A DNA stretch of 64,000 nucleotides. It comes from Scyliorhinus canicula. Its lineage: Eukaryota. A program made the position numbers and the translations under genes. The stretch is from positions 20,723,323 to 20,787,322 of the forward strand of contig NC_052153.1 of assembly GCF_902713615.1 (NCBI RefSeq). The letters run 5' to 3'. The notes below the pieces were generated by a model. The model had not been told where the DNA came from and ran no database searches. It saw only the letters and a list, made by a program, of their open reading frames with translations. Below are positions 5,527 to 56,565 of this stretch, one piece after another; positions within the stretch are counted from its first letter, which is position 1, and every line of letters begins with the position of its first letter.

Positions 5527-5855
5527 TTATTTGATTAAGCTGCAGGCTGTGGCGATTTCCCTTGTAGTGCAACTGCTATCACAGCATTGGTCAATAATTG
5601 GAATCTGCTTCTTGATCAATTTAGTTTGGGCGAGGGGCTTTGGGAAAACAAACTGCATTGTTTGGTCCCCCTCAACCTGAGGGCCAGCAACATGATAATC
5701 AGGTTCCATCTGCTCTTCCTGGGTGTAGTCATTGCCAAACGATTGCTGTCCATCATAAAACTCATAGTGCTGAAGCCTGTCATCGCCGAACACCCTCCGA
5801 ATTTGCTCTCTGTTCATCTTGAAGTAATCATCCCTGTTTGAGATCTCTGCGGGAT
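5527..5855 (-). CDS. Relaxin/insulin-like preprohormone, coding exon 2 (C peptide + A chain)
   Basis: Acceptor ttgtttctgttccag|ATCCC (AG at 5857-5856). The phase-1 join with exon 1 stays in frame (...PGY-N-PAEISNR...). Ends KK-QIPIIDQCCDSSCTTREIATACSLIK*, the insulin-superfamily A-chain motif CC-x3-C-x8-C after a dibasic site. Full product 165 aa. Confidence 0.93.
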
Positions 5856-6183
5856 CTGGAACAGAAACAAAGTTCCATCTGTGAACGCTCAATCAATGTA
5901 TCAGCATTTTAACTCCATGTTATCATCCCAAAATGGAACATTCACCTCAGAGAGAGTTTACCCATACTTACGTCGATTTAAGTGAACTTTTTTGCCGATT
6001 TAGTTTTTGCCTATTAACCATGCAAATTATTTTCTAATGTTGGTGTTTCTGTTTTTCTATCCTATAGGATGGGCTCAATGATCCCAGCTGGGAGCCTCAT
6101 GCCAGAGGAGTTTGGAGACATTTTGGGGCTGATTCACCAGCCACTGCTCCTGTTATTGTCTATTAAGGATTATTTAATAGGAA

Positions 6184-6385
6184 GGCAGCACGGTGGCACA
6201 GTGGTTAGCATTGCTGCCTCACGGAGTTGATGTCCCAGGTCCGATCCCAGCTCTGTGGAGCTTGTACATTCGCCTCGTGTCTGCGTGGCCTTCGCCCCCA
6301 CAACCCAAAGATGTGCAGGGTAGGTCGATTGGCCACGCAAAATTGTCCTTAATTGGAAGAAATGAATTGGGGACTCGAAATCTAT
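6184..6385 (+). mobile_element. HE1-type SINE (intronic)
   Basis: ggcagcacggtggcacagtggttagca head. Confidence 0.85.
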
Positions 6386-7414
6386 TTTTACAAAAGGATT
6401 ATTTAATAAGGAGGCAAATAGGGGGATTTAGTAATGGAAAAGGGCAGCAGGGAATGGGCATGAATGCAATATTTATGGGGAGAAATCTGCAGCAGGACCC
6501 GTGTGCAACCATCCTGTGCCAGGGAGCAGGAGGCGTGGGTTCTGTCAATGGGGAACATGGAGGGCTTGACTGAACGGCCACATGAAATAACCTTTTTACA
6601 AAGCAGAATCAAACACAGATTTACATCAATGAAATATTCATATGACATGCTGATTTATAATGCACAAACTTCGCTAATCATATACTTAACGTAACTGTGC
6701 TCCTTCATTCTTGTTTGATTTAGTTGGCACCTGATGACGCAAGAATTTTCAAATATTGAAATGGGGTCACACTGGGAAAGGGTTTGGGAAGCACCATGGT
6801 GCAAAACAAACTGGCTCTGCTCCTGATCTGCTATTGTGCCTTGGTGGAAAATCTTTCGTGAGGCTCCCACACATTTGGCAAAGGCATGGTGGTGCAGAGG
6901 GACAAATTCCCAGTTCTCATTGAGCTTTTCAGAACTATTATTATAGGTTTTGTTCTGACATGCTCTATAACTCAGTGATAATTTCAACTCACTTGACCTG
7001 CCAGGAACTGTGCAAGTAAACTTGCGCATTCCAGAAAGTGTGCTGAATTATAGGAAAATAACGTTTAAAGCCGGGTTTAATGTGTTCTCGGTGTGCCTCC
7101 AGAGCCATTTTGCGTTTCCAACTATTTGATTAGTGTTACTCACTCCGCTGGCTGGATTGCACCTCTTCTGTCGATCAGTCCAAGTCAAACTCAATCCTGA
7201 CCCATTACCTTGTGTTGTGAATTATTAACAATGCCAGGCAAGCTCCCAGTGAGACAGCTTGGGAAGGCCTTGCTGCAGATTCCTGGGGGGCTGCCACTGC
7301 AGGACTGTCGCTACAATACTAGAGGAGGTAGCAGAGACTGATCCCTTCAAAGGAAGCTGAGGAGAGGATGTCAGTACGAGACCCTCTTCCCAAATGTAGT
7401 CCTCAGTGACATTA

Positions 7415-7763
7415 CATAGAACATAGAACATAGAACAGTACAGCACAGAACAGGCCCTTCGGCCCTCGATGTTGTGCCGAGCAATGATCACCCCACTCAA
7501 ACACACGTATCCACCCTATACCCATAACCCAACAACCCCCCCCATAACCTTACTTTTTAGGACACTACGGGCAATTTAGCATGGCCAATCCACCTAACCC
7601 GCACATCTTTGGACTGTGGGAGGAAACCGGAGCACCCGGAGGAAACCCACGCACACACGGGGAGGATGTGCAGACTCCACACAGACAGTGACCCAGCCGG
7701 GAATCGAACCTGGGACCCTGGAGCTGTGAAGCATTTATGCTAACCACCATGCTACCGTGCTGC
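7415..7763 (-). mobile_element. HE1-type SINE, full length, young
   Basis: Head plus (TTCTATG)n tail; near-identical to 12288-12640. Confidence 0.9.
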
Positions 7764-8074
7764 CTGGCAGCATTGGGAAGGGGCAGTAACTGGAGAGAAT
7801 GTAAAGAACGTCTGATCATGTCCTCTCATGTGGGACATGCACAGATTCACTTTCAACAGGACAGAGGTCAGAGGTCAGAGACAGGCACCTTATGATTTAT
7901 TCCCCTCCCTTTTCCAAAATTGCTGAGTTCAACTCACTCAGCATTATCGGGGAACTAAACCTGGAATCTACTGTTCTCTGTAATTTACCTCCTTTGCTAC
8001 TGGGCCACATTATCTTTCTTTTAAGTTTAACATTTCACATCATTTAGACTCCAAGTGGGGGGGGGGTGGTCCAC

Positions 8075-8390
8075 AATAATAATAATAATCTTTATTACTG
8101 TCACAAGTAGGCTTACATTAACACTGCAATGAAGTTACTGTGAAAAGCCCTTAGTCGCCACACTCCGGCGCCTGTTCGGGTACACAGAGGGAGAATTAGG
8201 AATGTTCAATTCACCTAACAAGCACATCTTTCGGGAATTGCGGGAGGATACCGAAACACCTGGAGGGAACCCTCGCAGACACGGGGAGAATGTGCAAACT
8301 CCGCACAGATGGTGACCCAAGCGGGAACCGAACCTGGGACCCTGGCGCTGTGGCGCAACAGTGCTAACCACTGTGCCACCGTGCCACCCT
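8075..8390 (-). mobile_element. tRNA-derived SINE
   Basis: gggtggcacggtggcacagtggttagc head, (ATT)n tail. Confidence 0.8.
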
Positions 8391-8475
8391 AGCACGGACA
8401 GCCAGTGAATAATGCCACCAGCATGGGGTTTGATTCCCCCTTTGGCTGAAGTAGACTTGGGGCCCACCTCCCCAC

Positions 8476-8705
8476 NNNNNNNNNNNNNNNNNNNNNNNNN
8501 NNNNNNNNNNNNNNNNNNNNNNNNNNNNNNNNNNNNNNNNNNNNNNNNNNNNNNNNNNNNNNNNNNNNNNNNNNNNNNNNNNNNNNNNNNNNNNNNNNNN
8601 NNNNNNNNNNNNNNNNNNNNNNNNNNNNNNNNNNNNNNNNNNNNNNNNNNNNNNNNNNNNNNNNNNNNNNNNNNNNNNNNNNNNNNNNNNNNNNNNNNNN
8701 NNNNN
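8476..8705. other. Assembly gap (230 N) inside the intron of the relaxin-like gene
   Basis: Run of N. Confidence 0.99.
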
Positions 8706-9062
8706 GGACAATCATTAAACTAAAACTATAGTGTAAAGTAACAGAATTATGCAGCTCATTTCAGAATACAAGTAATTACAATAGATTACAAAATGTAGGT
8801 CTGCCTAATTTACAGAATAGAAATGAAAGGCTGTGGTTCCATGACTTTTAAATAATGGAGGATGCTACCTGAAGGTTCAACCCCTGCATGAATATGTGAA
8901 GACTGACATTCCTTCATGATAATGAAGCTGATAAGGTCATTGTATTCCTGATGCATTGATTTATAAAATCACATCATGTTTTAATTGGAATGACAACAAT
9001 GCATTTTCGGAATCACTGACTATTTCTCTACCTTGGTCAATAGAAGGGAGGTCAATACTCAC

Positions 9063-9231
9063 TATATCCGGGATGGAGGGCTCTCTGGCTAATGCCCCTG
9101 CAGATAGTTACCAGTATTTTGACAAAACTGTGACCACAGAGCTTTGTGAATACCAGACCAGGGTTTAATGTAGAATCTGCAAAGAGTGGCAGCGAGAGCC
9201 CAGTAATCAGGACGAACACCAGACACTTCAT
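9063..9231 (-). CDS. Relaxin/insulin-like preprohormone, coding exon 1 (signal peptide + B chain + start of C peptide)
   Basis: Manual translation from ATG at 9231: MKCLVFVLITGLSLPLFA-DSTLNPGLVFTKLCGHSFVKILVTICRGISQR-ALHPGY. Hydrophobic leader, B-chain motif LCG with C-x11-C spacing, ends at the canonical donor A|GTGAGT (9062-9057), phase 1 (169 nt). Confidence 0.93.
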
Positions 9232-9304
9232 TGCACTTCGTAAACCCGAATAGCTGCTAATTCCTCTCTAGCTCGGACTTCCAGGTTTATCTGTTCCCTG
9301 CCCA

Positions 9305-9311
9305 TTTTATA
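9305..9311 (-). promoter_or_regulatory. TATA box of the relaxin-like gene
   Basis: TATAAAA on the minus strand about 75 nt upstream of the ATG, with an AGATAA (GATA-type) hexamer at 9287-9292. Confidence 0.7.
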
Positions 9312-9805
9312 GCCGTTTTGCCTCCTTACTGTGAAGTTTCATTGTTTGCCATTAACTTTTGTCCCATTTTCTGATGGCTTTTGACATTTTTCCAACACCG
9401 TAAACCCATGAATGTCTTCACTAAACGACAACTCTTTGATTAATATTTAGACTAACCAGCTTCTATCTGTAATTGATATCGAACAGGGAGCTGTAGCAGC
9501 CACAACATCAAGAAGAGTGTAGCTGTAGCAACCACAACATCAAGCTAAGGGCAGCACAAGGAAGACATTACCAATAGTTGTCAAACTGACTACAGCTTTT
9601 AACAATTAAATTGTGCCATTCTCTCCCTTCCCATGGCCTACACTTGGATTCCACTCCGAGGAAGTTGCTTCTTCACAGATGCAATAGATTTGGGTAAACT
9701 TTGCCTGTCGACAGCCACCGAGAGTTACCTTTGTAAATGTACTAATTATGTGACAAAGGAATGGTAAAACAATAATGTATATTCTTTATTAAAAGATAAA
9801 CTATA

Positions 9806-12800
9806 GATCGCGATCTACTGGCCTCATTGCGAACTTGCTCAAGTGAAACGAGGCCGGTGAATAACGGGAGAGGCCAAAAGCGAGAAGCACGCCAGGCGGC
9901 AAACCAGGATGCAACCGGCCCGCTCCTGTAGGTGAAATCGGGATCTCACTGTAGAGAGGTGAGAAACCAATTATCACCACTTAAGCCCATTTCCATATGA
10001 CTAATGAGAGCCACCCTTTATCCAACGCCCTCCCGTCAGATAATGGCCTCCCCAGCAAGTGCCGATTAGTACTCCTTTTGAAAAATGTGAACTGGGCGGA
10101 AGGGCTTCTGTGGAGAGCTGAGGAGGTGAGAAGCCATCTTGGCTCACAGGCAAAGAGTCTGGGGGTGCTGGGCTTGCTGCCCCTGTACTCAGCGGAGGGG
10201 GTGGGGGACCATCGGCTGAGGGTAGGTTGCCATCGGAAGGTGGGGGGGGGTAACCGGGAGGGGGGGGGGGGCAACCACTCATGGCACCACCATGCCAAAC
10301 CCTGGATTGTGTGTACCCATTCTGGGATCAACCCTTGCCTCTGCCCGTCTGCCTCAATGACCACCCATAACCCCCGCTGACTGCCGAGGCCTCTGGCCAT
10401 GCAGCTGACATCTAGGGAATTGGCTGCCATGGTTAAGTGAGCACTTCACTCAACCTAAGTGGATTCCCATGGGTGGGCCAGCCATGTAGCATGTGGGAAT
10501 GATTGCCTAGCATCCCAATCAGACCGTGATGCCTGCACACTGCAGCAGCCAACGTCCGAACATCCAGGAGATGGAACACAGCTCTGGCTGGAGGGTGGGT
10601 GAGTGCCACGGGGAGGGGGCCAGTGCCCTGTTAAGTTGACGTTGTGAGCGGGTGTCGGGGTACAGGGCGCGTTGCCCGCTGTGACTGGGAGTGTGTGGGC
10701 AGGGCGTTCCGGGTAGGGGGTGGGGAGGATCAGTAAGGGAATGGCGGGTCCCGGGGTGGGAGCCACCGCTATTTGTCAATGTTCCCAATGCCTTAAAGAT
10801 GTTAAATGCTATGTCAGGGATGTTAGACTCAGAGGTTGCCCCAATGGTGCTGGTGCTGCACGATGTGACCAGACACAGGAGAAGGCGTCAGCAACAGTGT
10901 CTGCAGATGTTCGAGGCAATGGCCCATGTGCCGGATTCCACCCTGAGGATCCAGGTGGCCATCAACCGAGGGAGGGACCAAGAGGATGAGTCCCACTACG
11001 GCCCAGGGTGTACAGGCATCGCTGGTCCTTTGAACAAACGACGGACAGTGCGTGCAGCAGGAGGCTCCGCCTCAAAAAGGAGACGGTGCGACACCTGTGC
11101 CATATAGTCACGGACTTGGCACCACACGGAGGAGGAGGAGGACACATGCTCCCAGTGGCCGTCGAGGTCACTGCAGCCCTGAACGTTTCTGCCATGTGAT
11201 CATTTCAGGGCTCTAGCGGGGACCTGTGTGGACCTCACAGGCCACAGCCCACAGGTGCATCCGGCAGGTCACGAATGCCCTGTATACCCGGGCGGTAGAC
11301 TACACTGTCTTTGACATGGAACAGGCTCAGCAAGATGCCTGAGCTGCAGGTTTCTCTGCCATCGCCGGGATACCCGAGGTCCGGGGAGTCATAGATGTCA
11401 TGCATGATGCCTGTACGGCGGCCGGAGACCAAAGTGGAGACTCGCTACAACGAGGCCATGCAGCCACCCGGGCTGTCCATGAGCAGTGCATCGGACTCCT
11501 CAAGATGCGGTTCCAATGCCTCGACAGCTCTGGTGGTGGACTCCAGTACACCGTCCAGAGGGTCGTCTGCTTTGTGGTGGTCTTCTGTGCCCTCCACGAC
11601 CTGGCACAGCAGCGGGACGACAAGCTGGAAGTTGGTGATGAGGAGCGTGTGGCCATCTCCGAGGCGGAGGAGGATGAGGATGATGAGGAGGCTCCAGACC
11701 GGCAGGGGCTGGAGGACAAGGCCGGGGAGGAACCTGAGACCCAGGCGGAGGCTGAGGACATGTGGCAGTGATGAGTGTCCAGCAAGCCCGGAGGGCCAAG
11801 GAGGCTCTCATATTCGCTCGCTTTGCCTTGGGCGTGGCCTGGTCCGTCTTCACAACCTTACCCACCCACCACCCTCATTTACATCCTCCCAGGATATGTG
11901 TCACATCACTCCAGGGTGCTGGGACAGTGTTTTGGCACTGTCAGCGGGTCAGTGTTGAGGACAGGGGAGGTGATGATAACCTGCAGAGAGCTAAGCGCTG
12001 GTGCTCCTCAATCTATGCCATAGTCTGACCCCTGCCTGTCTGCTGAATGCTCGCTCACACCCATCACCTGCACGTAATAATGCATTGGGGAAAAAACTGA
12101 CAGAGGTTTCCTCCTGGTTGTGTACAAGGATGTTTATTGTTCAATACAAGTCCTCTCTCTCCCAATGGGGCCGCCCCACACCCTCCCACCGCCCCAAATA
12201 TCCACTCTCCACACCCACTTTCACCCCCTACCTGCCCCATTTCCCCCCCCCCCCCACCCCCACACTTCCAGTGCCCTCAGTGATAAAACATAGAACATAG
12301 AACATAGAGCAGTACAGCACAGAACAGGCCCTTCGGCCCTCAATGTTGTGCCGAGCCATGATCACCCTACTCAAACCCACGTATCCACCCTATACCCGTA
12401 ACCCAACAACCCCCCCCTTAACCTTACTTTTATTAGGACACTACGGGCAATTTAGCATGGCCAATCCACCTAACCCGCACATCTTTGGACTGTGGGAGGA
12501 AACCGGAGCACCCGGAGGAAACCCACGCACACAGGGGGAGGACGTGCAGACTCCACACAGACAGTGACCCAGCCGGGAATCGAACCTGGGACCCTGGAGC
12601 TGTGAAGCATTTATGCTAACCACCATGCTACCCTGCTGCCCCCCTGATCCTCAATGTGCTTGGCCCTCCGAGCTCTACCACTATGTCGAGGTGTCTCCCC
12701 AGGATTCACAGCTGAGGTGCAGACAACCAGGTGCTTACCTCATCCCATGGTCTTCGATGTTCCTGGTGGATGTCCTCTGAGGGTCCTGGGGCTGGAGGCC

Positions 12801-14760: not shown

Positions 14761-14794
<34 letters not shown>

Positions 14795-15355: not shown

Positions 15356-16112
15356 CAGTGATCTTCAAAGTCAGGGGCGCAACCCGCGGGTGGATGGCAG
15401 GCGGGTGTCGGGAGGGTTGCGGAGCCGTTGTCTGCGGCGCTCCAGATCGAGCAAATCCCTGCGCAGCAGCCGGCTTTTCATAACGGCGGCTGCAAGCGGC
15501 CGCAAACATGTTAAAAAAAATTTGCCCGCATTGCGCATGCGCGCTGATCATCGGGTACACATGCGCAGTGCGGCTGCTATTTTTTTAAACGGTTGCAGCT
15601 TTTTGTTTTACAAGTTCTGTAGTGGGTTTTTATTCATTTGTTTTATTCATTTAATTTTATTCATTTTATTTTTTTTACAAGTTCGGGGGGGTTTTATTCA
15701 TTTTTTTCATTTATTTTTCTCATTTTATTTTTATTTTTTTCTGCAAGTTGGCGGGGGGGGGGGGGGGGTTTATTTGATAAAATTTTACAAGAAAAAAATT
15801 CTGAACTTTGGACAGATGGAGACTCCATGCTTTCCGATACCGGAAGGCTTCACCTTCATCCAACAGGTTCCATCGGAGGAGCGTGTACGAGGGTCAAAGG
15901 GACCCAAAACCATTTCCTCCATTTTTGTCAGCAGCAAACAAGGTAAGAGAAAATGGTGGGTCGCGCAGGTCGGCCGGTGTGGGTCGCGAAGGTCGGCCGT
16001 CGTGGGTGGCGAAGGTCGGCCAGCATGGGTCATGAAGGTTGGACGGCGTAGGTCGCGAAGGTTGGCCGGTTGGTAAAAATGGGTCCCCGGACAGAAAGTT
16101 TGAAGAACATTG
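15356..16112. mobile_element. Non-autonomous hAT (Charlie-like) DNA transposon
   Basis: TIRs cagtgatcttcaaag / aaagtttgaagaacattg with 8-bp TSD tcctaaac (15348-15355) / ttctaaac (16113-16120). Confidence 0.85.
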
Positions 16113-16212
16113 TTCTAAACTGTGTTCTATTCGCAACAGGGTCACACTGTGTTTCTGGTTGTGCTCTTTGACATCTGTTTTGTCACACTGTTAAAGAGTT
16201 TGGTGTCTGCAC

Positions 16213-18200: not shown

Positions 18201-18235
18201 TTTCAATGATCCAGATACAGACTGGAATAGTCACA

Positions 18236-21826: not shown

Positions 21827-21829
21827 GTC

Positions 21830-36850: not shown

Positions 36851-36854
36851 AAGT

Positions 36855-38892
36855 CTGTTCGAATCTATTATTAAGGAGGTTATAGCGGAATACTTAGAAA
36901 ATCATAATGTGATCAGGCAGAGATTTCCCTCTCACATCATGGCTTTGTGAGAAGGAAATCGTATTCAAATTATTTGTGTTTTTTGAGGGAGTAACAAGCA
37001 AGGTGGATAAAGGGGAACCTGTAGATGCAGTGTACTTGGATTTCCAAAAGGAATTTGATAAATTGTCATGTCAAAGGCTATTACACAGGATACCAGAATA
37101 TAGTGTAGAGGGTAACATGAATAAAGGATTGGTTAGCTAATGGGATGCAGAGAGTAGGAGTAAATGGGTCTTTTATTGGTTGGCAAATTGTAACTAGTAG
37201 AGATCAGTGCTGGGGTCTCAACTATTTATGATCTATGTCAATGATTTTGATGTATGGTAACTACATTTGCTGATGATATAGGTAGGAAAATAAGTTGTCA
37301 AGAGGAGATAGAGAGCCAGCAAAGTGATGTAGACAGGTGAAATAAGTTGGACAAAAATTGGAAGAGGGAATATAATGTGGATAACTGTGAATGTATTCAC
37401 TTTGGCATGAAGAATAAAAAAATCAGAATACTATTTAAATGTAGATAGATTACAGAACTCACTGGTAAGAGGGATCTGTATTTCCTCGTCAATGAATCAC
37501 AAGAAGTTAGTATGCAGGTACAGCAAGGGATTAGGACGGCAAATTGAATGTTAGTGTTGACTGCAAGAAGAATGGAACAGAAAGGATGGGAACATTTAAT
37601 GCAGCTGTACAGGACATAGGTGAGACCACATCTTGAATACTGAGCACAGGTTTAGTCTCCCATTTGAAAAAAAACATTTATTTGTCTTAGAAGCTGGAAG
37701 GAGAAGTTTTTCTTCATTCATTCCTGGCCTGAAGTGACTATTGTATGAAGAAGGGTTGAACAGGTTTGGCCATTACCCATTGGGGTTTAGAAGAATGAGA
37801 GGTGATCTTATTGAAATATCTAAAATCCTGAGAGGATTTAATAGGATAGGTATCAGGAGGATATTTCCAATTGTGGGAAAGACTAGTGCTGCGATTTTGC
37901 ACCCGTGTTCGCAGTGAGCGCAAACAGCGATGTGGGCGCAAAATCGCGTGAGACTCTAGAAATGAAACTCTCACCAGTGAGATTGCGTTTTCCGATTCCC
38001 CCCCCGCCTCTTGCCAGTGGCGTAATGAAGTTGCCGCCCCGATCAGCAACATCATTTCAATACATTTTAGTACAATTAGCTGCCTCCCCTGACATATCGT
38101 CCTCTCACAATTTAAATTCTCCAATCGCCGACATCACGTTACATTGGCGAGGTTTACAACTGCTTTTTAACAATGGGAACCAGGTGATGGGAGCCGGCCA
38201 CAGGCGAACAGGTAAGTGTTGGCCCCAGGGGAAGATGGAGATGCCCGGACAATACCCGGGCACTGCTCGCTCCTGGCACTCCTGTCTGGCACTCTGGCAC
38301 TGTCCCCGGCACTGCTCCCTCCATTGCGTGGGGTCTCCTTCTGCATTTGGGGATGGGGCCACCCATGTCCTTGGAGAGGGTTTTCCCATGCCCACGCGGG
38401 GCCCATGCCCATCCTGTGTTTTTTCTCAGAGATCAGGGCGTCCTTTACAAAGGGCATCTGGATCTCGGGATTCCCAGCTGTCGGCTTTTTCCGGCCCTGC
38501 CCCACCAGCGTGACAGCACGGGCCACACCTGCAGGTTTACTCTGTATTGAGGTGCTGGACTATCTGACAAGGAAAGCTGGCTCTGCAGCCGTGCGAGCAA
38601 CAATCTGCTTTTCTAGCCTTCGCCAGCACTCTGTGCAGAGAATGGAAAATTCCACCCAATATAAAACTGAAAGAGAGGTTTCTCTTTCTCTCTGGCGGTA
38701 GTTAGTACGGGGAATTCTCTCCTCCACACACCAGTGGAGGTTGGGCAATTGAATTTATTGAAGACAGATTCAAATAGCTTTTTGGTAGACAAAAGATTCA
38801 AAGATTATGGCGGGGAGAGCAGACAAGAAAGGGAAATTGAGCCCATAACCAGATAAGCCTTGATCTTCTTGACTAACAGAGCAGGCTCAAAA
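36855..38892 (+). mobile_element. Old CR1 LINE with a MITE insertion (about 37885-38655)
   Basis: Degenerate VYLDFQKEFDK, FADD and RPHLEY motifs with multiple stops. Confidence 0.85.
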
Positions 38893-39615: not shown

Positions 39616-39940
39616 CAAGAACTGTTATTCTAAGCTGTCAAAACAGCTGCGACCACATCCTGGACTGGCAACTCATAACCTTATGTCTGGCAACTCCTAA
39701 CCTTATGACCTTATGTAATCACGCACGCGACATATGGGTTGGACAAATGTAAGCTATATATGGAATAAGAATGCAAACTAATTCTGCTTTGAAAGGGTAT
39801 ATTGACACAGTTTTAAGCCACAGCTCAGTGAGAAGGTGCCAGCAGAACTGGGCTCCAGGACCTTTCTCCCAGAGCTCTGCACAATACATTGCTTCTTTTG
39901 CTCACGTTAAGGTCTACGTGTGAATATTTTCACCCAAGAA

Positions 39941-40190
39941 TTATTGCAGTTTATATTCTGACTGGCTCTTTAAGTTAATTATAACTCAATTGACCTGCCA
40001 GAAATATACCAATGAACTGGCACATTCCAGTTGAATATAAGAAATTAATCAGTGAAATCATTTAATGTGCTCTCATGTCATTTCAAAGCTACTTTTGATA
40101 TCCAACATTTCATCATAACTTTATTCACTCAGTTATCTCTTTCTCCTGTCTGTCAATCCCATTCCAACCAAACCACAATCCAGTACCATG
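39941..40190 (-). other. Paralogous intron segment (copy 3) homologous to 6941-7205
   Basis: Shared blocks in the same orientation, e.g. aactca(c/a)ttgacctgccag, cattccag, tttaatgtg(t/c)tctc and cactc. Confidence 0.6.
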
Positions 40191-41249
40191 GGCTGGATTT
40201 TACCTTTTATACCCCACCTCCCCTAATTTACCCAAATGAAAGTTTATGAGCAGGCCCACCAATAGAAAAAGCTTCTCCACAGCCTTATTACATTGGAAGG
40301 AAATGTTTTTTGGCTCAGGGACAGACCTCTGACCCACCTGGCCGTCTGGAGGCTCAGTTGCCCCAGCAGCGCCAAGTTTGAGTGGTGGTCACATGCTGGA
40401 ACTACAGGCAGTCCTCAAACAAGAAGAGCATGCGCCACCGGATAATAATAACTTATTGTCACGAGCAGGCTTCAATGAAGTTACTGTAAAAAGCCCCTAG
40501 TCGCCACATTCCGGCGCCTGTTCTGGGAGGCCGTTGCGGGAATTGACATTATTCTGCATTACAAGCCAGTTGTTTAGCCCTCTGTGCTAAACCAGCCCCT
40601 AGAGGTAAGTCTGGGGTATCAGCAGGCCTCAGCAAGGAAGTGGGGGGGGGGGGGGGAGTTGGCCATGAGGGAGGTGAGGTGCCAGGATTGAGGGGCCAGA
40701 GACGAGATTAAAGATGCAGATAGATATTGTGGGGAGCTGAAGGGGAGCCTTCGATAGGCGCACTTGATCACTCAAGAGAGGTGACCCTGCCCCTTGTTCG
40801 ACATCAACTCGCGCAGTAAACCCGCCAGGCTTCCATGATGTGGGCCTCCATCTCCGTGCGTAAAATGTGGCGGAGGTGGAGTGAGGCACTTAAGTAGCTA
40901 TTACATGGCTATTTAAGTACCTCGATAGGCCTAAGGGTGGCCAGGTGGGCAGGCTGCCTGACATCTTCCCCGCCCACCATAAATTAGGAGACAGGTCAGA
41001 GTGGGTGCCAAGGGGGTGGGAAAGCTGGGCACTGAATTTTATGATTAACCCCTGACTTCAACCACACTGGTTGGGGAGCTGCAAAAATCCAGGCCCCTGT
41101 GGTGGAAATGTTTCCAAGCTCCTGACAAGACAGCACTGGGAAAGCCAAAATTCCAGTGGTGCCACATCAGGACTGTCAGAGCTAGGCTGACAGCTTCAAA
41201 GGAAGGGGAGGAGAGGAGGTCAATACAAGGTCCTTTTCTCCATTGTGGT

Positions 41250-41462
41250 CCTCAGTGCCATTGGGAAAGCTTTCTCCGTTGAGGGGGAAAGTTGACTGGT
41301 GGTGATTTAACCGGAGGATCACCACACTTCAGGCGATGGGCAATGTTGAGAAGGCGGGGCCTTCATGAATAACCCCAGTCAGTACAGGAATTGAATCCAC
41401 ACTGCTGGTCTCACTCTGCATCACAAACCAGCTGTCCAGCCAACTGAGCTAAAACCGGCCCC
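41250..41462 (-). mobile_element. tRNA-derived SINE (possibly Deu-domain type)
   Basis: gccggttttagctcagttggctggacagc head and ggattcaattcc B-box. Confidence 0.6.
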
Positions 41463-41558
41463 AAACATTTCAATATAAATTACATCTAAACTTTCACCTT
41501 GTGACTATTGCATAATTATTTCTCAAACCTAGTCAATGGAACAGATTTTAATACTTAT

Positions 41559-41710
41559 CATTTAACAATGAATGAGAGCTCTTCAGACATCCAAGAAGCA
41601 AATCGGCAAAATATTATGTCTAAACGATTTGTGGATATCTCGTCAAGGTTTGCTCCACCAGTGCTCACTTTAAGCTCCAGGAGGCTAAGTAGAAAGAATA
41701 TAAATTGTAA
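41559..41710 (-). pseudogene. Relaxin-like paralog, decayed exon 1 (copy 3)
   Basis: Reads ..FIFFLLSLLELKVSTGGANLDEISTN.., with AACCTTGACGAGATATCCACAAA matching the NPG(L/E)(V/I)F(T/L)K codons of copies 1 and 2, and AGAGCTCTC matching AGAGCCCTC. The donor position reads ATAAGT and the first 43 intron nt are 30/43 identical to the intact gene. The LCG codons are missing and the 5' end abuts a Gypsy LTR. Confidence 0.65.
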
Positions 41711-44303
41711 TTAAAGTAACAAAAAGTCTGCCCATGGCAGCAAACTACTTACACTACACACTCCGTTGAGATAACCAACGTGCCGGCCCCTCTTTGGCCG
41801 GCTTTTATGCTCGATCTTACAAGCCCCAGCTGGGTCGGCCTTCGCCCACTATCGGGGAAGCTCAAATTCCGTGAGCCCCACAGGGAGGTCAATTACCACT
41901 TCCCCATGGGCCTCATGGGAGTTATGACACCCTTCTCCCCGCCCCCCGCCAAGTCCAAATGTTTCCCCTCTGAAACCATCAGAGGAGGTCTGCTGCGGTG
42001 CGCCACACGTGGCTATGCTTCTGGCAGTGGTGGTCTGGGTCGGGGGGCATGTAACGGTCGGTAGACCACCCTTTCCTAGATGATCTCTGGAGAGGTATTG
42101 CCGGGATTTCAGCCCCGGGACGCATTGCCCATCTGTCCAGAGGCCTTGGTGTCCATCTTTGAGTCTGAGTCATCATCGTCTTGATGGTCTGGGTGTTGGG
42201 CCTCGGTGGGTTGCATGCCCTCGCTACGGAGTGGTTCCCGCGGAGGTGGAAGTTCCGACGTCCCTGGTCAGGTGTCCTCCAATGCGGACTCCCGTTTCTT
42301 CAGCTGGTTAACATATTTACACAGGATCTTCCCTTGGACATTAACCTTGTAAGATACGGCCTTGTTCGCTCCAACATTATCCCTGGGAGCCAGACTGCAC
42401 CATCTCCGAAGTTGTGGACATAAACAGTGGCCACCGGTTGAACGTTCCGCCCTGGCTTCCTGTGGTCATGATACTTCTGCTGTGAATCTTGCTGCAGCTC
42501 TCCTTTCCTGCCCAGGTTTGGGAAAGTCAGGCTTAATCGGGTTCTGAGGGGCCAGTCCATCAGCAGCTCTGTGGGTGCCACCCATGTTGTTACAAGCGGT
42601 GTGGTCCTCCAGTTGAAAAGTAATCTCGGCAGTTGTGTGTCCAGGGAGCCCGTGGTCAGCTTCCGCCTTCCTCTCTTAAATGTTTGGACCACCCGTTTGG
42701 CCAGGCCATTAGATGATGGATGGTCGGGGTGGTTCAGATATGTCTGACTCCATTCGTACATATACAAGTGGAGAACTCTTCGCTTGTGAACGGGGAGGAT
42801 GCCATCTTCGACAATTAGTTCCTGCTACTTTTGGAAATAGGGCTGCTGGGGGTGGGGCCCCCTGTAATACACTATGTAGCAGCATGTGGCGGAGCTTTGC
42901 CAATGTGCGATCTCTCTGCGCCCACGTGTGTATCTGTACGACTGTCACCGGCAGAGTGTCCAAACAGTTTAAAGTTGCCACAATGTTGTCTGCCACTGGT
43001 GGAGATAAGGGCGATGGTGAAAAATATATTCATATGCTGCCAGCAAATTTGGGCCAGGATTTGGACCAAAGCTATGGGATGAATTCCCTTGCCCTCCTTA
43101 AAACAGTGGTTTGTGGTCAGCGATTATAAGTGCCACCCATAAACAAACCGATGAAATTGTTTCACACCGAATGTCATAGCCAAGCCTTCTTTTTCCAACT
43201 GGACATAGAAGCGCTCCGCATCTGCCAGAGTTCTGGATGCGGATGCAATGGGGCGTTCTGTGCCAACGTCTCATCTATGGGACAGCACCGCCCCTATACA
43301 GTAAGGGGAGATATCGCAAGTAAGAACGAGCGGCCGGGTTGGATCATAGTGGGCAAGCAGCTGGGAGGATGACAGCCGCCTCTTCACTCCTGCAAATGCC
43401 TCCTCCTGTGGGGTTCCCCAGGCCCACGTCTGGTTCTTCCTTAACAAGATGTGAAGCGGTGCCAGCAGGGTGGCCAAGTTTGGAATGAACTTTCCGCAAT
43501 AATTTACGAGGCCCAGAAATGATCTTAGTTCCATCGTATGAATTCGGAGCCCCTTTCGTGGCCTAAACCACGGGATGAAATCCAACTTTATCCACCCTGT
43601 ACATTGAGTATCATCACGACCTTTGCTTGAAAAGCACACTTGCTTCCTTTCAGGTGGGCGCCCACCTGGGAGACTCCTCTGAAAACCTCCTCTTGCTTAT
43701 CCATGTGGTCTTTGTTGGTGGCCCCCATAACGAGCACAACTTCTAAATACCCCGCCATCTTGCTTAGTCGCTGGACGATACGTTCCATCACCCTTTGAAA
43801 GATTGCAAGGGTTGAAGAGACCCTGCAAGGGAGGTGGGTGTATTCGAATAGCCCCCCCACCTCCAATGTTTAAAACCACATGTTTCCGTGATGCGGTGTC
43901 CAGGTATGACTGCAGATATGCTTGGCTGATATTTAGTTTGGTGAATGATCATCTGCCAGCGCAAGGCATAGGGTAACCTGCCAGGCCTGAGTTGAAGGCC
44001 TCCAGTTTCCTGAAAAGCGGCATTTTTGAAAGATAATTCCACAAGCTGCTGCCCAGCAATCTTTCGGAGAGGCTGCGGCGTCTTAACAACAAAGAACAAA
44101 GAAAAGTACAGCACAGGAACGGGCACTTCGGCCCTCCAAGCCTGTGCCGACCAAAGTTTCGTCTTGAGGTAGAGTTTCGTCTTGAGGTAGAGTTGAGATT
44201 TTTTATTTCCCTCGTCGCCAGTTTAATGACAAGAAGCCAGCGGTACGAAGAACATAGATTTTAATTAAAGTAACATAAAGTCTGTCCACAGCAGTGAACT
44301 GTT
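41705..44303 (-). mobile_element. Gypsy LTR retrotransposon (deleted), both LTRs partial
   Basis: PBS tggcgacgag (44220-44211), PPT at 41940-41930, and ttaaagtaac..aagtctg shared by the two LTR remnants. LRSFLGLVNYCGKFIPNLA and HPSSNGLAKRVVQTFK pol motifs. Confidence 0.9.
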
Positions 44304-51913: not shown

Positions 51914-52086
51914 TCAGGAATTTAAGCTGCAGGTTTGTATAGAAGACAGCAAGCAACAGGTTTCACAACAGTTTTAAAGGTATGTTGAAGTTTTCTTCCA
52001 AATTTCTTGCAATAAAATATATTTTTTCACTTCAACGATCAATAAAGTATACTTTTTTACTTGGATACAATGGTTCCGTTGTCTTT
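51914..52086 (-). pseudogene. Relaxin-like paralog, exon 2 pseudogene (A chain)
   Basis: Pyrimidine tract plus acceptor ttgtttacag|AA, phase 1, in frame to ...QEIWKK-TSTYL*NCCETCCLLSSIQTCSLNS*. KK-x7-CC spacing is as in the intact gene and CCTGCAGCTTAA is shared. Premature TAA at 51974-51976 and one codon missing between the last two cysteines. Confidence 0.75.
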
Positions 52087-52937
52087 CTGTAAACAAGGAG
52101 GGGAGGTGATGGAAGGGAGGGAGGGGAGGGAGAGGAAGGAGGCAAGGGGAAGGAGGGGAGGGAGAAGAGGGAGGAGGGGAGGCTCTTCTGGGGAGTTCTC
52201 AACACATAGGGACATGCATTTAACTCAGCCTCTGCTCCACGCACCCCCCCCCCCCCCCCCGACTAAATGCCTTAATTCCATCTTCATACAGGCCAAAGGC
52301 AGTGGCCAGGTGATCACAAACTGCCCTTGCATCACTCGGAGCTTCCTCACCTGCCCCAGGAGGTATGCCTGCATCAGGTTCCATATTGCCCTCCTCCAGC
52401 TACTCCACTTCATGTGGCAAGACATCTTGTGGGTGAATGCTCAGTCCATTCTGAAGGGCAAAGTTGTGTAATGCACAACACACAGCAACAATCTTTGCAC
52501 CTATCCCTGGGCATGCAGTAAAATACCCCTGACCTGTACAAGCATCAAAAAGGTGATTTCAAAATACCAATTATCCTCTCCACTACCTGGCGTGTTGCCT
52601 TCCTGTTGATCAATGAAACAGTGTCATTTCTAGGCACCCTCAATACAATATATGTTCAATCGACAGCCCGATTACTTTTGGGAACCAAGCGATTTGGTAG
52701 AATACGATTGACCTTTCCTTCACCTTCACAGGGGATGTGTCAAATATAATAAGCTCCGAAGCCCTATGATGAATTGCATGAATTACCTGGTGAATGCTGG
52801 TCCTCGCAGTATTCTGTCAAATGTTACACATGTCACTAATGCTATGTTGAAAGGAACCAAAAAAGATTCAGCGCTGTCCTGAGTTTTGTTTCCACTGTTA
52901 AGGCAGTTAGAGATCACCTTCGGGCCTTCCTTCAATT

Positions 52938-53124: not shown

Positions 53125-53210
53125 AACATTTCACAAAGGCGTTGCTTCCTCGCTGAAGCGCAGTCTCCTGGCACACATCTCCTCTGACATCATTTCATAT
53201 GATAGCCTGT

Positions 53211-54253
53211 GTCTGTACACTGAGGGATCTGTACACTCTGAGGGGTCTGTACACTCTGAGGGACATGTACACTCTGAGGGACATGTACACTCTGAGGGGT
53301 CTGTACACTCTGAGGAGTCTGTACACTCTGAGGGGTCTGTACACTCTGAGGGACATGTACACTCTGAGGGACATGTACACTCTGAGGGGTCTGTACACTC
53401 TGAGGAGTCTGTACACTCTGAGGGGTCTGTACACTCTGAGGAGTCTGTACACTCTGAGGGGCCTGTACACTCTGAGGGACATGTACACTCTGAGGGGTCT
53501 GTACACTCTGAGGGGTCTGTACACTCTGAGGAGTCTGTACACTCTGAGGTGTCTGTACACTCTGAGGGGCCTGTACACTCTGAGTGGTCTGTACACTCTG
53601 AGGAGTCTGTACACTCAGAGGGGCATGTACACTGTGAGGGGCATGTACACTGTGAGGGGCCTGTACACTCTGAGGGGGTCTGTACACTCTGAGGGGTCTG
53701 TACACTCTGAGGGGTCTGTACACTCTGAGGGACATGTACACTCTGAGGGACATGTACACTCTGAGGGGTCTGTACACTCTGAGGGGTCTGTATACTCTGA
53801 AGGGCCTGTACACTCTGAAGGGTCTGTACACTCGGAGGGGTCTGTACACTCTGAGGGGTCTGTACACTCTGAGGGGTCTGTACACTCTGAGGGGTCTGTA
53901 CACTCTGAGGGGTCTGTACACTCTGAGGGGTCTGTACACTCCGAGGGGTCTGTACACTCCGAGGGGTCTGTACACTCTGAGGGGCATGTACACTCTGAAG
54001 GGTCTGTACACTCTAAGTGGTCTGTATACTCTGAAGGGCCTGTACACTCTGAGTGGTCTGTACACTCGGAGGGGTCTGTACACTCGGAGGGGTCTGTACA
54101 CTCTGAGGGGCCTGTACACTGTGAGGGATCTGTGCACTCTGAGGGATCTGTACACTCTGAGGGATCTGTACACTCTGAGGGATCTGTACACTCTGAGGGA
54201 TCTGTACACTCTGAGGGGTCTGTATACTCTGAGGGACCTGTACACTCTGAGGG
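53211..54253. repeat. 18-bp minisatellite (TCTGTACACTCTGAGGGG)n, about 58 copies
   Basis: Directly visible tandem array with variant units (GGGACATGTAC, GGAGTCTGTAC, GGGCCTGTAC) and a 1-nt insertion near 53675. Confidence 0.97.
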
Positions 54254-54436
54254 ATGAGTAACTAATTCGCCCCCTCTCCCGGCAACATGTTGCCGAGCTC
54301 TTCTCTCATGAACCCTATGCTGATGTCAAAGCCTCAGTGATTTTAAGACACCAGGTGAAATAATGGGAGAGGAATAGGTAAACCTAAAAGTGAAAGCAAG
54401 AGACGAAATAGCGGAGATTCAGAACTGTGAAGCGAA

Positions 54437-54607
54437 TTGAAGTACTTGGTGTTCATTCTGGTAATCAGACAGTTCCTGCTCTTTACAGATTCTGCTGAAG
54501 TTGACCCTGGTGAGATATTCTTAAAGCTCTGATTTCATAAACCTGCGATACAAATATTGCGTATCTGCAGGGTCAGCGGTTGGAGATCACTCCAGCTGCA
54601 GCATATA
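54437..54607 (+). pseudogene. Relaxin-like paralog, exon 1 pseudogene (copy 2)
   Basis: Translates LKYLVFILVIRQFLLFTDSAEVDPGEIFLKL*FHKPAIQILRICRVSGWRSLQLQHI then GTGAGT. The start codon is TTG, the first B-chain Cys is TGA (54530-54532), the donor is phase 0, and the TATA box is degraded. The 5'UTR (54355-54436) and intron (54608-54652, 54855-55140) align to the reverse complement of 9232-9312, 9018-9062 and 8710-8995. Confidence 0.9.
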
Positions 54608-55344
54608 GTGAGTGTTGACCTACCTTCTATTGACCAAGACAGAGAGATAGTCGTTGGTGCCGTGCAAGTTGGGCGGTATCCTCCGTTTCACCGGCAGCGC
54701 ACTCACGCCCACGGATTTACCGACGGCGTGGGGGTACCCACAATGGAAAACCCATTGGCCGGCTGCCGGGAAGGAGGATCCCACTGTTGGCGGGAGCGTG
54801 CCGTGCCAGAAAATGGGTGTGGCGGGACCGAGAATCCCACCCGTCACGTTTACATGTCATTCCTGTTAAAACGTGATGCAATTTTATATATCAATACATC
54901 AGGAATATAATGACCTTATCAGCTTAATTATCACGTAGGAATGTTTTCATATATTCATGCAGGGGTTGAACCATCAGGCAGCATCCTCCATTATTTGAGA
55001 GTCACAGAACCATGGCCTTTGATTTCTAGGTTAATTAGGTAGATCTACATTTTGCAATCTATTGTAATTATTTGTATTCTGAAATGAGTTGCATTGTGCA
55101 ATCATCCTGTTACTTTCTACTTCTGTTTTAATTTAATGATCATCCAGAGTTATGTCATGAATAATGATTACTTGTTTTATACATGTCATCAAGCCATGAT
55201 GATTTTTCAGTAAACCAGTCATCTATCGGTCCATCCATCCATCTCTCTGTCTATCCCGTGACTTCACTATGGGGCAGGGTGGGGGTGCTACCTCAGGCAA
55301 AGGGGAATCATTGGCATTATTCTAAGCCACACACTAGTCGTCTG

Positions 55345-56565
55345 AGTCGTAGAGTTTTATAGCACAGAAAGAGGCCCTTCGGCCCATCGTGTCTGTGACG
55401 GCCATCAAGCACCTATCTTCTCTAATCCTATTTTCCAGCACTTGGTTTGAAGCCTTGTGTGCTATGGTGTTTCCATGCTCATCTAAATGCTTCTGAAATG
55501 CTGTGAGGGTTCTGTCTCTATCACCCTTTCAGGCAGTGAGTTTTTCCTTAAATCCTCTCTGAATCTCCTGTCCATTACCTTAAGTTGAGCCCTCAACTAA
55601 GGGGAAAGGTCTCTTCTTATCTATCCTGGTATCTGATGACCCAAGAATGATCAAATATTGAAATGGGATCACATTTTAGAAGAGTTTGAGACATGATACA
55701 AAACAAACAGGGTCCGCTTCTGTCGCTCTACTGTGCACAGTGGCACAGTGATTAGCGCCGCTGCCTCACAGCGCCAGGGACCCGAGTTCAATTCCGGCCT
55801 TGAGTGAGTGTGTGGAGTTTGTACATTCTCTGCATGTCTGCGTGGGTTTCCTCCGGGTGCTGCTGTTTCCTCCCACAATCTAAAGATGTGCAGGTTAGGT
55901 GGATTGGCCATGCTAAATTGTCCCTTAGTGTCCAAAGATATGTTGGTTAGGTGGGTTTACGGGGATAGGACGGGGGGAGTGAGTCAAAGTGCGGTGCTCT
56001 TTCAGAGGGTGAGTGCCGACTTGATGGGCTGAATGGCCTCCTTCTGCACTGTAGTGATTCTGAGATTGCGTACTTTGGTGGAAAATCTTCAGTGAGGTTT
56101 CCACACATCTGGTAAAGTTATAATGGCGCTGAGGGAACAACTCCCTGCAAATTCTCATTGAGTCTTTCAGCACTATTATTAAAAGCAACATCCTGGTGAA
56201 TCTCCTCTGCACCCTTTCTGCTGCAATCAGCTCCTTCCTATTGTGTGGTGACCAGAACTGCCCACAATACTCTAGCTGTGGATATATGAGCAGTTTATAT
56301 AGCTCCATCACACCCTCTCTGCTCTTGTATTCTTTGTGTCGGCTAATAAATCCTGTCTAATCCTGTTAGAATTTTATACGTTTCTACGAGACCCCCTCTC
56401 ACTTTTCTAAACTGCAATGAATATAATCCTAACTGACTTAGTCTCTCCTCGTACAACAGTCCCCTCATCCCAGGAACCAGCCTGGCAAACCTTCGCTGCA
56501 CTCCCTCCACAGCAAGAACATCCTTCCCCAGATAAGAACATCAAAACTGCACACAATACTCCAGG
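55345..56565 (-). mobile_element. CR1 3' fragments (55345-55628, 56184-56565) and an HE1 SINE (55733-56065, +)
   Basis: CR1 tail and LEYCGQFWSPH..ERVQRRFTRML motif; SINE head cacagtggcacagtgattagc. Confidence 0.85.
55632..56180. other. Paralogous intron segment homologous to 6731-6943, split by a SINE
   Basis: ctgatgac(g/c)caagaat..tcaaatattgaaatggg and ttggtggaaaatctt..gtgagg...ccacacat..ttctcattgag..tttcag..ctattatt match 6731-6943 in direct orientation. Confidence 0.75.

What the first reader, a model, noticed from the sequence alone, without database searches (positions are those of the whole stretch)
5527..56180. Birth-and-death cluster of relaxin-like genes: one intact gene plus at least three paralogous remnants in about 50 kb
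Seen in sequence: intact gene (5.5-9.3 kb, -), decayed exon 1 with intron homology (39.9-41.7 kb, -), A-chain exon (51.9-52.1 kb, -) and exon 1 with UTR/intron homology (54.4-56.2 kb, +). The remnants show different levels of decay, implying repeated duplication and loss. Established knowledge: a local relaxin-family expansion is known in placental mammals (RLN1/2, INSL4, INSL6). Inference: this is an independent expansion in a cartilaginous fish, probably extending beyond the window.
Basis: partly seen in the sequence, partly recalled or inferred. Interest (0 to 1): 0.85.

Follow-up and report, generated by a model that had tools for sequence, protein, structure and literature searches.

The report
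Shark relaxin-like gene with decayed copies
This stretch of shark DNA holds one working, very highly expressed gene for a relaxin-like hormone plus two clear broken copies, and skates and other sharks carry similar clusters, so it is a real but fairly ordinary case of genes duplicating and decaying, in a lineage where I found no published description of it.

Summary
Partly confirmed.

- **Intact gene:** it is real. It has two coding exons on the minus strand (9231-9063 and 5855-5527), a phase-1 intron and a 165-aa product. The N gap (8476-8705) lies inside the intron. RNA contigs join 9063 directly to 5855, so the gap does not affect the reading frame.
- **Copy 2 (54362-56842, +):** a definite paralogous remnant. 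It keeps exon 1, the region just upstream and colinear intron. It has lost its start codon and TATA box, carries a stop at the first B-chain cysteine, and has a shifted donor phase.
- **Copy 3 (about 39.9-41.7 kb, -):** a probable, much older remnant. The exon-1 match is weak, the donor is destroyed, and two colinear intron blocks are significant.
- **"A-chain exon" (51.9 kb):** not established. Only the cysteine pattern and splice phase fit. There is no alignment, profile or flank homology.
- **Family:** the gene belongs to a fast-evolving family found only in elasmobranchs in these searches (skate "prorelaxin-like"; unnamed models in catshark and bamboo shark). A 23-kb skate locus holds three paralogs. 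The expansion therefore looks old and shared, not private to this species.
- **Classification:** the protein lacks relaxin's RxxxRxxI/V cassette, so it is relaxin-family but not relaxin proper.

The scan's earlier notes on this topic all lie on this same window.

The parts
9063..9231 (-). Exon 1 coding part of the intact gene. It encodes the signal peptide and the B chain (C32-x11-C44, cassette H-x3-K-x2-V) and ends in a phase-1 donor A|GTGAGT.
   Evidence: RNA contigs run from 5855 into 9063-9092. The same sample holds 29-57% of exon-1 words. The best PDB match is the INSL3 B chain, E 0.009.
9305..9311 (-). TATAAAA box, 74-80 bp upstream of the ATG.
   Evidence: Read directly from the sequence. 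The matching place in copy 2 reads GAAATAA.
9335..9403 (-). Upstream block conserved with the bamboo shark and little skate genes; a candidate promoter-proximal element.
   Evidence: blastn: L001 9590-9757 = window 9484-9316; L002 9719-9776 = window 9395-9339, 81%. Three-way alignment. Absent from copy 2.
5856..9062 (-). Intron of the intact gene. It contains the N gap (8476-8705), SINEs at 6184-6351, 7401-7764 and 8182-8395, and the blocks shared with copies 2 and 3.
   Evidence: RNA depth is 0-7 in the part of the intron that was laid (5856-6150), against thousands in the exon.
5527..5855 (-). Exon 2 coding part of the intact gene: C-peptide, KK138-139, A chain (CC147/148-x3-C152-x8-C161) and TAA stop. 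The 3' UTR runs to at least 5250.
   Evidence: Pfam Insulin PF00049 E 0.0013, 20 bits, below the 23-bit cut-off on the fragment.
54362..56842 (+). Copy 2: inverted paralogous remnant of the 5' flank, exon 1 and the proximal intron. The exon-1 relic is 54437-54607: TTG in place of ATG, TGA at the first B-chain Cys, 171 nt against 169 nt so the donor phase is shifted. The C-x4-W motif after the second Cys is retained.
41553..41735 (-). Copy 3: heavily decayed exon-1 relic. An ATG is followed by a hydrophobic run, then several stops; the donor GT is now AT.
   Evidence: nhmmer E 0.05 with the profile, 0.14 and 1.3 with single queries, best non-self hit each time. blastn E 0.011 in the regional search. 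Sequence. 46-48% identity to the other two.
39927..41262 (-). Copy 3 intron relics. 41184-41262 matches gene 7335-7413 and copy 2 56778-56842. 39927-40189 matches gene 6926-7205. Both are colinear with the exon-1 relic.
   Evidence: Block 7335-7413 is unique flank next to a SINE insertion that copy 2 lacks.
51914..52086 (-). Unproven A-chain-like stretch. It has a polypyrimidine tract plus AG acceptor in phase 1, 37 open codons, KK, a TAA one codon before NCC, then CC-x3-C-x7-C-x4-stop.
   Evidence: For. Against.

Best explanation
The window holds part of a tandem array of relaxin-family (insulin-superfamily) hormone genes in a shark, evolving by duplication and decay.

Shown:
- One member is intact, correctly spliced and very abundantly transcribed in one sample.
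- Its precursor has a signal peptide, a B chain, a C-peptide of about 90 aa and an A chain preceded by a KK site, with the six canonical cysteines.
- Copy 2 is a segmental, DNA-level duplicate. It carries intron and 5' flank, is inverted relative to the gene and is disabled by several lesions.
- Copy 3 is probably an older duplicate of the same kind, now almost erased.

Inferred:
- The copies arose by unequal recombination in this repeat-rich region. They were later broken up by SINE, LINE and minisatellite insertions and at least one rearrangement.
- The proximal intron of the gene and copy 2 (85% identity) was probably homogenised by gene conversion, because exon 1 and the 5' flank are only 65% identical.
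- The intact peptide is presumably secreted and cleaved to a two-chain hormone. It has H-x3-K-x2-V in place of relaxin's R-x3-R-x2-I/V and no Trp after the B-chain helix, so it is unlikely to act as a classical RXFP1 ligand. Its receptor is unknown.

The same family is clustered in little skate (three paralogs in 23 kb) and catshark, so the array is an old elasmobranch feature with lineage-specific turnover.
For: Gene structure and splice. A 30-letter loose end at 5855 equals 9063-9092, exon word depth is about 5,000-40,000 against 0-7 in the intron, and one search finds exon-1 words in the same sample. Superfamily. Family homologs, all elasmobranch: (E 4e-7 to 1e-3 against 1.8 billion proteins), names, full-length alignment. 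A model of the skate homolog has confident B and A helices (pLDDT 83-91), and its best 23 Swiss-Prot fold matches are all relaxin, INSL3, INSL5 or INSL6 precursors. Copy 2. Copy 3. Clusters elsewhere: skate L002, catshark gene models of 82 and 234 kb on one chromosome, a three-B-chain model P0006, and weak A-chain-like bits in bamboo shark L001. Conserved upstream block.
Against: Only one functional member is in this window. Copy 3's exon match is not significant alone (E 0.05-1.3). Its support depends on two intron blocks that I could not exclude as low-copy transposon pieces with only 64 kb of sequence. Block 6725-6943 matches copy 2's region in the wrong orientation, which plain duplication does not explain. 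The family tree is unresolved, so orthology and timing are not shown. No flanking gene is present to identify the relaxin locus by synteny. Transcription of the remnants was not tested.
Confidence: 0.8

Rival explanations
1. There is one gene and one pseudo-exon only. Copy 2 is the sole true remnant. The 41.6-kb and 51.9-kb features are chance similarity plus shared transposon fragments.
For: Copy 3's exon match has E 0.05-1.3 and no homology upstream of it (32% identity). The 51.9-kb site has no alignment, profile or flank support. The window is full of SINE and LINE copies.
Against: The 41.6-kb site is the top non-self hit for three queries, in the same register, on the strand and side predicted by two significant colinear blocks. 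One of those blocks is unique flank shared by all three copies.
Confidence: 0.15
2. At least three remnants exist. The 51.9-kb stretch is a true exon-2 relic, perhaps the lost partner of copy 2's exon 1, separated from it by an inversion.
For: CC-x3-C-x7/8-C occurs only twice in all six frames: at the real A chain and here. The expected count with a nearby stop is 0.08 per window, or 0.0025 with a dibasic site. The frame is phase 1 from a good acceptor, with 37 open codons. The wrongly oriented block beside copy 2 hints at an inversion.
Against: The patterns were defined after seeing the site. The family profile gives no hit at E<=200. There is no homology in the flanks, whereas copies 2 and 3 keep 66-85% in non-coding DNA. 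Residues between the cysteines do not resemble any family member.
Confidence: 0.35
3. The copies are assembly artefacts, such as uncollapsed haplotypes or a misjoin at the N gap.
For: There is an assembly gap inside the gene, and the region is repeat-rich.
Against: The copies differ by 15-50% and by many indels and insertions, far more than alleles would. Spliced RNA links the two sides of the gap.
Confidence: 0.02
4. The family is not relaxin-derived. It would instead be an independent insulin/IGF-like lineage that resembles relaxins only in precursor layout.
For: The A chain scores best against DILP2, IGF-1 and insulin A chains. It lacks the relaxin Gly (CCDSSC), and the relaxin B-chain cassette is absent.
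Against: The B chain matches INSL3 best. Paralogs have CCxxGC and C-x4-W. Skate paralog A in the same cluster carries RxxxRxxV. The fold search ranks only relaxin and INSL precursors at the top. NCBI names the skate member prorelaxin-like.
Confidence: 0.1

Closest known systems
Local expansion of the RLN locus in placental mammals (RLN1/RLN2, INSL4, INSL6)
   Same: Both are tandem duplication of a relaxin-family gene followed by rapid divergence and loss of the relaxin receptor cassette in some copies. The local duplications are described in PMC3310001.
   Different: This is another vertebrate lineage. In this window only one copy is functional and the others are fragments. Orthology of the locus to RLN was not shown, because the window has no flanking genes.
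Elasmobranch 'prorelaxin-like' gene models: XP_055486529 in little skate, XP_072373717/18 and GCB70559 in cloudy catshark, GCC25587 in bamboo shark
   Same: They align over the full length, including C-peptide motifs. They share the two-exon layout and a conserved upstream block. They are clustered in skate and catshark.
   Different: They are only 25-36% identical to this gene in exon 2. This gene was not found in the protein collections searched. It has H-x3-K-x2-V and CCDSSC.
INSL3
   Same: The B-chain core (KLCGH.FV+.LV..C) is the best solved-structure match, E 0.009.
   Different: There is no Trp after the second B-chain Cys and no Arg pair. The A chain is insulin-like. Orthology was not tested.
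Glycosylated relaxin-like molecule of the male Atlantic stingray
   Same: It is an elasmobranch relaxin-like peptide whose B chain lacks the relaxin-specific motif, as cited in PMC551602. Another paper lists alkaline glands among the sources of shark relaxin-like peptides (PMC2805637). This makes it a plausible relative of the family.
   Different: The tissue of the expressing sample here is unknown.

Membership tests
Insulin/IGF/relaxin superfamily (Pfam PF00049) | Six cysteines: B chain C-x11-C and A chain CC-x3-C-x8-C | tested here: met
   C32 and C44; C147, C148, C152 and C161 in the spliced 165-aa product.
Insulin/IGF/relaxin superfamily (Pfam PF00049) | Profile score above Pfam's gathering threshold | tested here: inconclusive
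   The exon-2 fragment scores 19.8-20.1 bits against a 23-bit cut-off. The spliced protein has no reference and was not submitted. Homologs P0009 (27.5 bits) and P0006 (32.5 bits) pass; P0008 and P0003 fall just below.
Insulin/IGF/relaxin superfamily (Pfam PF00049) | Precursor order signal-B-C-A, with a basic cleavage site before the A chain and a phase-1 intron in the C-peptide | tested here: met
   KK138-139; donor after codon position 1; the splice is confirmed by RNA.
Insulin/IGF/relaxin superfamily (Pfam PF00049) | Insulin fold: one B helix and two A helices | tested here: inconclusive
   Only the skate homolog P0009 was modelled. Its B and A segments have pLDDT 83-91. The top 23 Swiss-Prot matches are relaxin or INSL precursors at E 6e-3 to 0.2 with TM below 0.4. 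The PDB search gave only a weak insulin-precursor hit.
Relaxin proper (RXFP1 ligands) | B-chain cassette R-x3-R-x2-I/V | tested here: not met
   The gene has H-S-F-V-K-I-L-V. Skate paralog A in the homologous cluster does have R-x3-R-x2-V.
Relaxin proper (RXFP1 ligands) | Glycine in the A-chain loop (CCxxGC) | tested here: not met
   The gene has CCDSSC. P0008, P0001 and P0006 have the Gly.
Relaxin proper (RXFP1 ligands) | Position in the conserved RLN locus (synteny with its flanking genes) | not testable with these tools
   No other recognisable gene was found in the 64-kb window. The long ORFs checked are transposon-derived or have no Pfam match.
INSL3 | B-chain His/Arg/Val/Arg binding residues plus Trp after the second Cys | tested here: not met
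   His and Val are present, Lys replaces Arg, and there is no Trp. Trp is retained in copy 2, P0009 and P0008.
Elasmobranch prorelaxin-like cluster | Significant full-length similarity to its members, including the C-peptide | tested here: met
   E 3.6e-7 to 9.5e-4 library-wide for exon 2 alone. Alignments.
Elasmobranch prorelaxin-like cluster | Shared non-coding upstream block | tested here: met
Birth-and-death tandem gene cluster | Neighbouring paralogous copies that share non-coding DNA (segmental duplicates, not retrocopies) | tested here: met
   Copy 2's intron and 5' flank are colinear with the gene. Copy 3 has two colinear intron blocks.
Birth-and-death tandem gene cluster | Pseudogenes with disabling lesions and unequal divergence | tested here: met
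   Copy 2 has start loss, a stop, a phase shift and TATA loss at 65% exon identity. Copy 3 has stops and a lost donor at about 48% identity.
Birth-and-death tandem gene cluster | Several functional paralogs in the same array | tested here: not met
   Only one intact gene lies in this window. The skate locus has three apparently open paralog exon sets. The flanks of this window could not be read.

The most novel reading that the evidence does not exclude
Sharks and rays may carry an old, fast-turning-over tandem array of relaxin-derived peptides. Most members would have lost the classical relaxin receptor cassette. The intact member here would be one of the most abundant messages in a single tissue. 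On this reading the array encodes secreted reproductive or accessory-gland factors, of the kind purified from stingray as a relaxin-like molecule. These would evolve under sexual or maternal-fetal conflict and act through a receptor that is not yet known.
Probability: 0.35. Interest if true: 0.7.

Novelty: new member of a known kind. Interest (0 to 1): 0.5.

Why it matters
Current accounts of relaxin-family history rest on whole-genome duplications plus local duplications seen in placental mammals. The paleogenomic study I read sampled no cartilaginous fish (PMC3310001). A second, independent local expansion in elasmobranchs would show that the relaxin locus is repeatedly prone to tandem growth and to loss of its receptor-binding motif. 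This one includes a member expressed at very high level and relatives that are unnamed or unannotated in public genomes. It also offers candidate genes for the relaxin-like peptides purified from shark and ray reproductive tissues decades ago. Practically, the intact gene here and two skate paralogs appear to be missing from public annotation, and two catshark models look like chimeras stitched across the array.

Tried and rejected
The splice was therefore shown through the loose end at 5855, not as a listed joint.
- Word-indexed protein searches with exon 2, with a family profile and with a C-terminal profile added no new members.
- The spliced 165-aa protein has no reference. I did not type it into the Pfam, structure or library tools; exon pieces and homologs were used instead.
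- A family tree of eight sequences was star-like. The grouping of this gene with skate paralog A had only 59/58 support.
- Foldseek against the PDB gave one insignificant insulin-precursor hit.
- Other weak A- or B-chain-like stretches were set aside as noise or unproven:
  - 16108-16158 (+), profile E 0.05 falling to 0.37 with a richer profile.
  - 38540-38701 (-), a 'CCSHGC' at about the distance expected for copy 3's exon 2, but E 6 and no flank homology.
  - 43836-43895 (-).
It was not counted as colinear evidence.
- Four of the five literature searches looked for a described elasmobranch relaxin gene cluster and found none; the fifth looked for the stingray relaxin-like molecule.
- The N gap was not filled or looked up.
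Full report
**The assembly gap**

The only N run in the window is 8476-8705. It lies between the two coding exons of the proposed gene, inside the intron. Exon 1 starts at ATG 9231 and ends after 9063 at a donor A|GTGAGT. Exon 2 starts at 5855 after ..ttccag and ends with TAA at 5529-5527. Both splice sites are phase 1, and the joined frame gives 165 residues.

RNA-derived contigs of three runs from one sample (X2, X3, X4) stop matching the genome at 5855. They continue with up to 63 letters, and the 30 shown are exactly the + strand of 9063-9092. The transcript therefore joins the two sides of the gap at the predicted junction. The gap affects only the intron length. I did not fill it or look it up.

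Word depth over exon 2 is about 5,000-40,000 in those runs, against 0-7 in the intron. The same sample holds 29-57% of the exon-1 words. Most other RNA runs under the same species label hold none. The message is therefore abundant and restricted. The RNA carries one variant, 5630 G>C, which changes Ala to Gly in the C-peptide.

**What the gene encodes**

The product has these parts:
- a hydrophobic N-terminus;
- a B chain with C32-x11-C44;
- a long acidic C-peptide;
- KK at 138-139;
- an A chain with CC-x3-C-x8-C.

Pfam's Insulin model matches the A-chain part at E 0.0013, which is below the gathering score on this fragment. Among solved structures, the B chain matches the INSL3 B chain best (E 0.009). 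The A chain matches DILP2, IGF-1 and insulin A chains weakly. The relaxin cassette R-x3-R-x2-I/V reads H-x3-K-x2-V here. The A-chain loop lacks the relaxin glycine. No Trp follows the second B-chain cysteine.

**Relatives elsewhere**

A full HMMER scan of 1.8 billion representative proteins with exon 2 alone gave eight hits. Three are long proteins of 491-5,306 aa that I set aside as likely low-complexity matches without reading their sequences. The other five are from elasmobranchs:
- two consecutively numbered unnamed models and one older model in cloudy catshark;
- one model in brownbanded bamboo shark;
- a little-skate protein named prorelaxin-like.

All five align with this gene from signal peptide to A chain, including C-peptide motifs. 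Two pass Pfam's Insulin threshold.

A model of the skate member has confident B and A helices and a disordered C-peptide. Its best 23 matches among Swiss-Prot models are all relaxin, relaxin-3, INSL3, INSL5 or INSL6 precursors, at weak E-values.

The genes share a non-coding block just upstream (window 9335-9403) in all three species. The window's SINE family is also present in the bamboo shark and skate loci. I checked that only indirectly.

**Copy 2**

The stretch 54362-54662 (+) matches 9306-9008 (-), nhmmer E 1e-33. The match continues colinearly through 54855-55145 = 8995-8706, up to the edge of the gap. It continues further through 56567-56778 = 7984-7765 and 56778-56842 = 7417-7353. The gene carries a 350-bp SINE between the last two blocks that copy 2 lacks. 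That SINE is 96% identical to another copy at 12275-12640, so it inserted after the duplication.

The exon relic (54437-54607) has these lesions:
- TTG in place of ATG;
- TGA at the first B-chain cysteine;
- a length of 171 nt against 169 nt, so the donor phase is shifted;
- the TATA box is gone.

It keeps a C-x4-W motif that the skate and bamboo shark proteins also have. Because intron and flank are included, this is a DNA-level duplicate and not a retrocopy.

**Copy 3**

A profile of the first two copies finds 41515-41661 (-) as its best remaining hit, E 0.05. Each copy used alone finds the same place as its best non-self hit, at E 0.14 and 1.3. The site has an ATG followed by a hydrophobic run, several stops, and AT where the donor GT should be. 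Alone this would not be convincing.

Two further matches lie downstream on the same strand and in the right order: 41184-41262 = 7335-7413 (E 2e-13) and 39927-40189 = 6926-7205 (E 5e-22). The first block is also present in copy 2. It is unique flank next to the SINE insertion, not part of the SINE. Given that anchor, the exon-like hit falls in a search space about sixty times smaller than the whole window.

I rate copy 3 as probably real and much older. Exon identity is 46-48%, against 65% for copy 2. A third match, 8079-8180 = 40442-40526, is out of order. It also occurs at 1285-1358, so I treat it as a repeat.

**The 51.9-kb 'A-chain exon'**

In favour:
- CC-x3-C-x7/8-C occurs only twice in six frames: at the true A chain and here.
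- Shuffled windows give 0.29 such patterns, 0.08 with a stop within six codons, and 0.0025 with a dibasic pair upstream.
- The frame is phase 1 from a good acceptor at 52087, with 37 open codons.

Against:
- These patterns were set after seeing the site.
- A TAA sits one codon before the CC.
- tblastn gives E 1.5 and nhmmer gives nothing.
- A family profile that includes the skate paralogs gives nothing at E<=200.
- The flanks share nothing with the gene's exon-2 flanks beyond one 12-mer, although copies 2 and 3 keep 66-85% identity in non-coding DNA.

I leave it unproven, at about one chance in three.

**Clusters in other species**

The 23-kb little-skate locus around the annotated gene holds two more, unannotated, paralogs. 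Paralog A is upstream: exon 1 at L002 739-936 and exon 2 at 3871-4236. Its B chain carries R-x3-R-x2-V and its A chain is the most like this gene's. Paralog C is downstream on the other strand, with exon 2 at 21330-20971.

The two catshark models span 82 and 234 kb of one chromosome for products of 240 and 225 residues. One has three B-chain-like segments and the other a repeated C-peptide segment. This is what a gene predictor would produce by stitching exons across an array. The bamboo shark locus shows weak A-chain-like fragments 8 kb downstream of its gene.

A tree of the eight sequences is star-like, with terminal branches of 0.7-1.6 changes per site. The family evolves fast, and the order of duplications cannot be read from it.

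**Interpretation**

The window shows birth-and-death turnover in a relaxin-family array. The array is a shared elasmobranch feature and not a private expansion of this species.

One detail points to more than simple decay. Between the gene and copy 2, the 5' flank and exon 1 are 65% identical (K2P 0.48), while the adjoining intron is 85% identical (K2P 0.16), with the switch at the donor site. The non-coding 5' flank is as diverged as the exon. Selection on the peptide alone therefore does not explain the contrast. Gene conversion of the proximal intron, or a mosaic origin, fits better. This is inference.

**Literature**

Known accounts describe local duplications of the RLN locus in mammals and sampled no cartilaginous fish (PMC3310001). 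Relaxin peptides have been purified from skate, dogfish and sand tiger shark. A relaxin-like molecule lacking the relaxin motif was purified from male stingray (PMC551602; PMC2805637). Four of my five searches looked for a described elasmobranch relaxin gene cluster and found none; the fifth, for the stingray molecule, returned no sequence.

**Verdict**

The thing itself is a new example of a known kind of evolution. Its interest lies mainly in the very high expression, the lost receptor cassette, and the unannotated family across sharks and rays.

Noticed in passing
window 8706-9306 vs 54362-55145: Divergence between the gene and copy 2 is a mosaic. The 5' flank and exon 1 are 65% identical and the adjoining intron is 85% identical, with the change at the donor site. 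Because the non-coding flank is as diverged as the exon, gene conversion of the intron fits better than accelerated peptide evolution.
   Followed up: partly
window 6725-6943 vs 55627-55770 and 56059-56181: A block of about 220 bp in the gene's intron recurs beside copy 2, split by a SINE. Its orientation is the opposite of what copy 2's colinearity predicts. It is either a low-copy transposon or evidence of an inversion within copy 2.
   Followed up: partly
window 9335-9403 (-); L001 about 9650-9720; L002 9719-9776: A block of about 60-70 bp upstream of the gene is conserved between this shark, bamboo shark and little skate. It is a candidate promoter-proximal element and is absent from copy 2.
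   Followed up: partly
window 53211-54253: A minisatellite of 58 copies of an 18-bp unit (90% matches) ends about 100 bp before copy 2's homology begins. It may have replaced copy 2's promoter region.
   Followed up: no
window 7401-7764 and 12275-12640: Two SINE copies with a LINE-derived tail are 96% identical, so they are recent insertions. One sits in the intron of the intact gene at a site that is empty in copy 2.
   Followed up: partly
window 5630: The RNA contigs carry G>C on the + strand (Ala to Gly in the C-peptide) at about half the depth in two runs. It is probably an allele.
   Followed up: no
L002 739-936 and 3871-4236 (+); L002 20971-21330 (-): Two relaxin-family paralogs flank the annotated little-skate prorelaxin-like gene and have no gene call in that locus. 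The upstream one has the classical RxxxRxxV cassette.
   Followed up: partly
proteins P0001 and P0006 (cloudy catshark): These gene models of 240 and 225 aa span 82 and 234 kb and contain repeated C-peptide or B-chain segments. They look like chimeras stitched across a gene array.
   Followed up: partly
window 16108-16158 (+): A short stretch reads C-S-K-L-C-S-I-R-x5-L-C-F-W, resembling the A-chain end of catshark P0003. The profile E is 0.05, falling to 0.37 with a richer profile. It may be another relic or noise.
   Followed up: partly
window 38540-38701 (-): A 'CCSHGC' motif preceded by basic residues lies about where copy 3's exon 2 would be expected, 1325 bp below the last intron block against 1340 bp in the gene. 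It has profile E 6 and no flank homology.
   Followed up: partly
L001 24308-24523 (-): Two A-chain-like fragments in the bamboo shark locus ('KRPLTRCCTRGCSIR', then 'LSDQCCDH..') lie 8 kb downstream of the gene on the other strand. The profile E is 0.003 for the first.
   Followed up: partly
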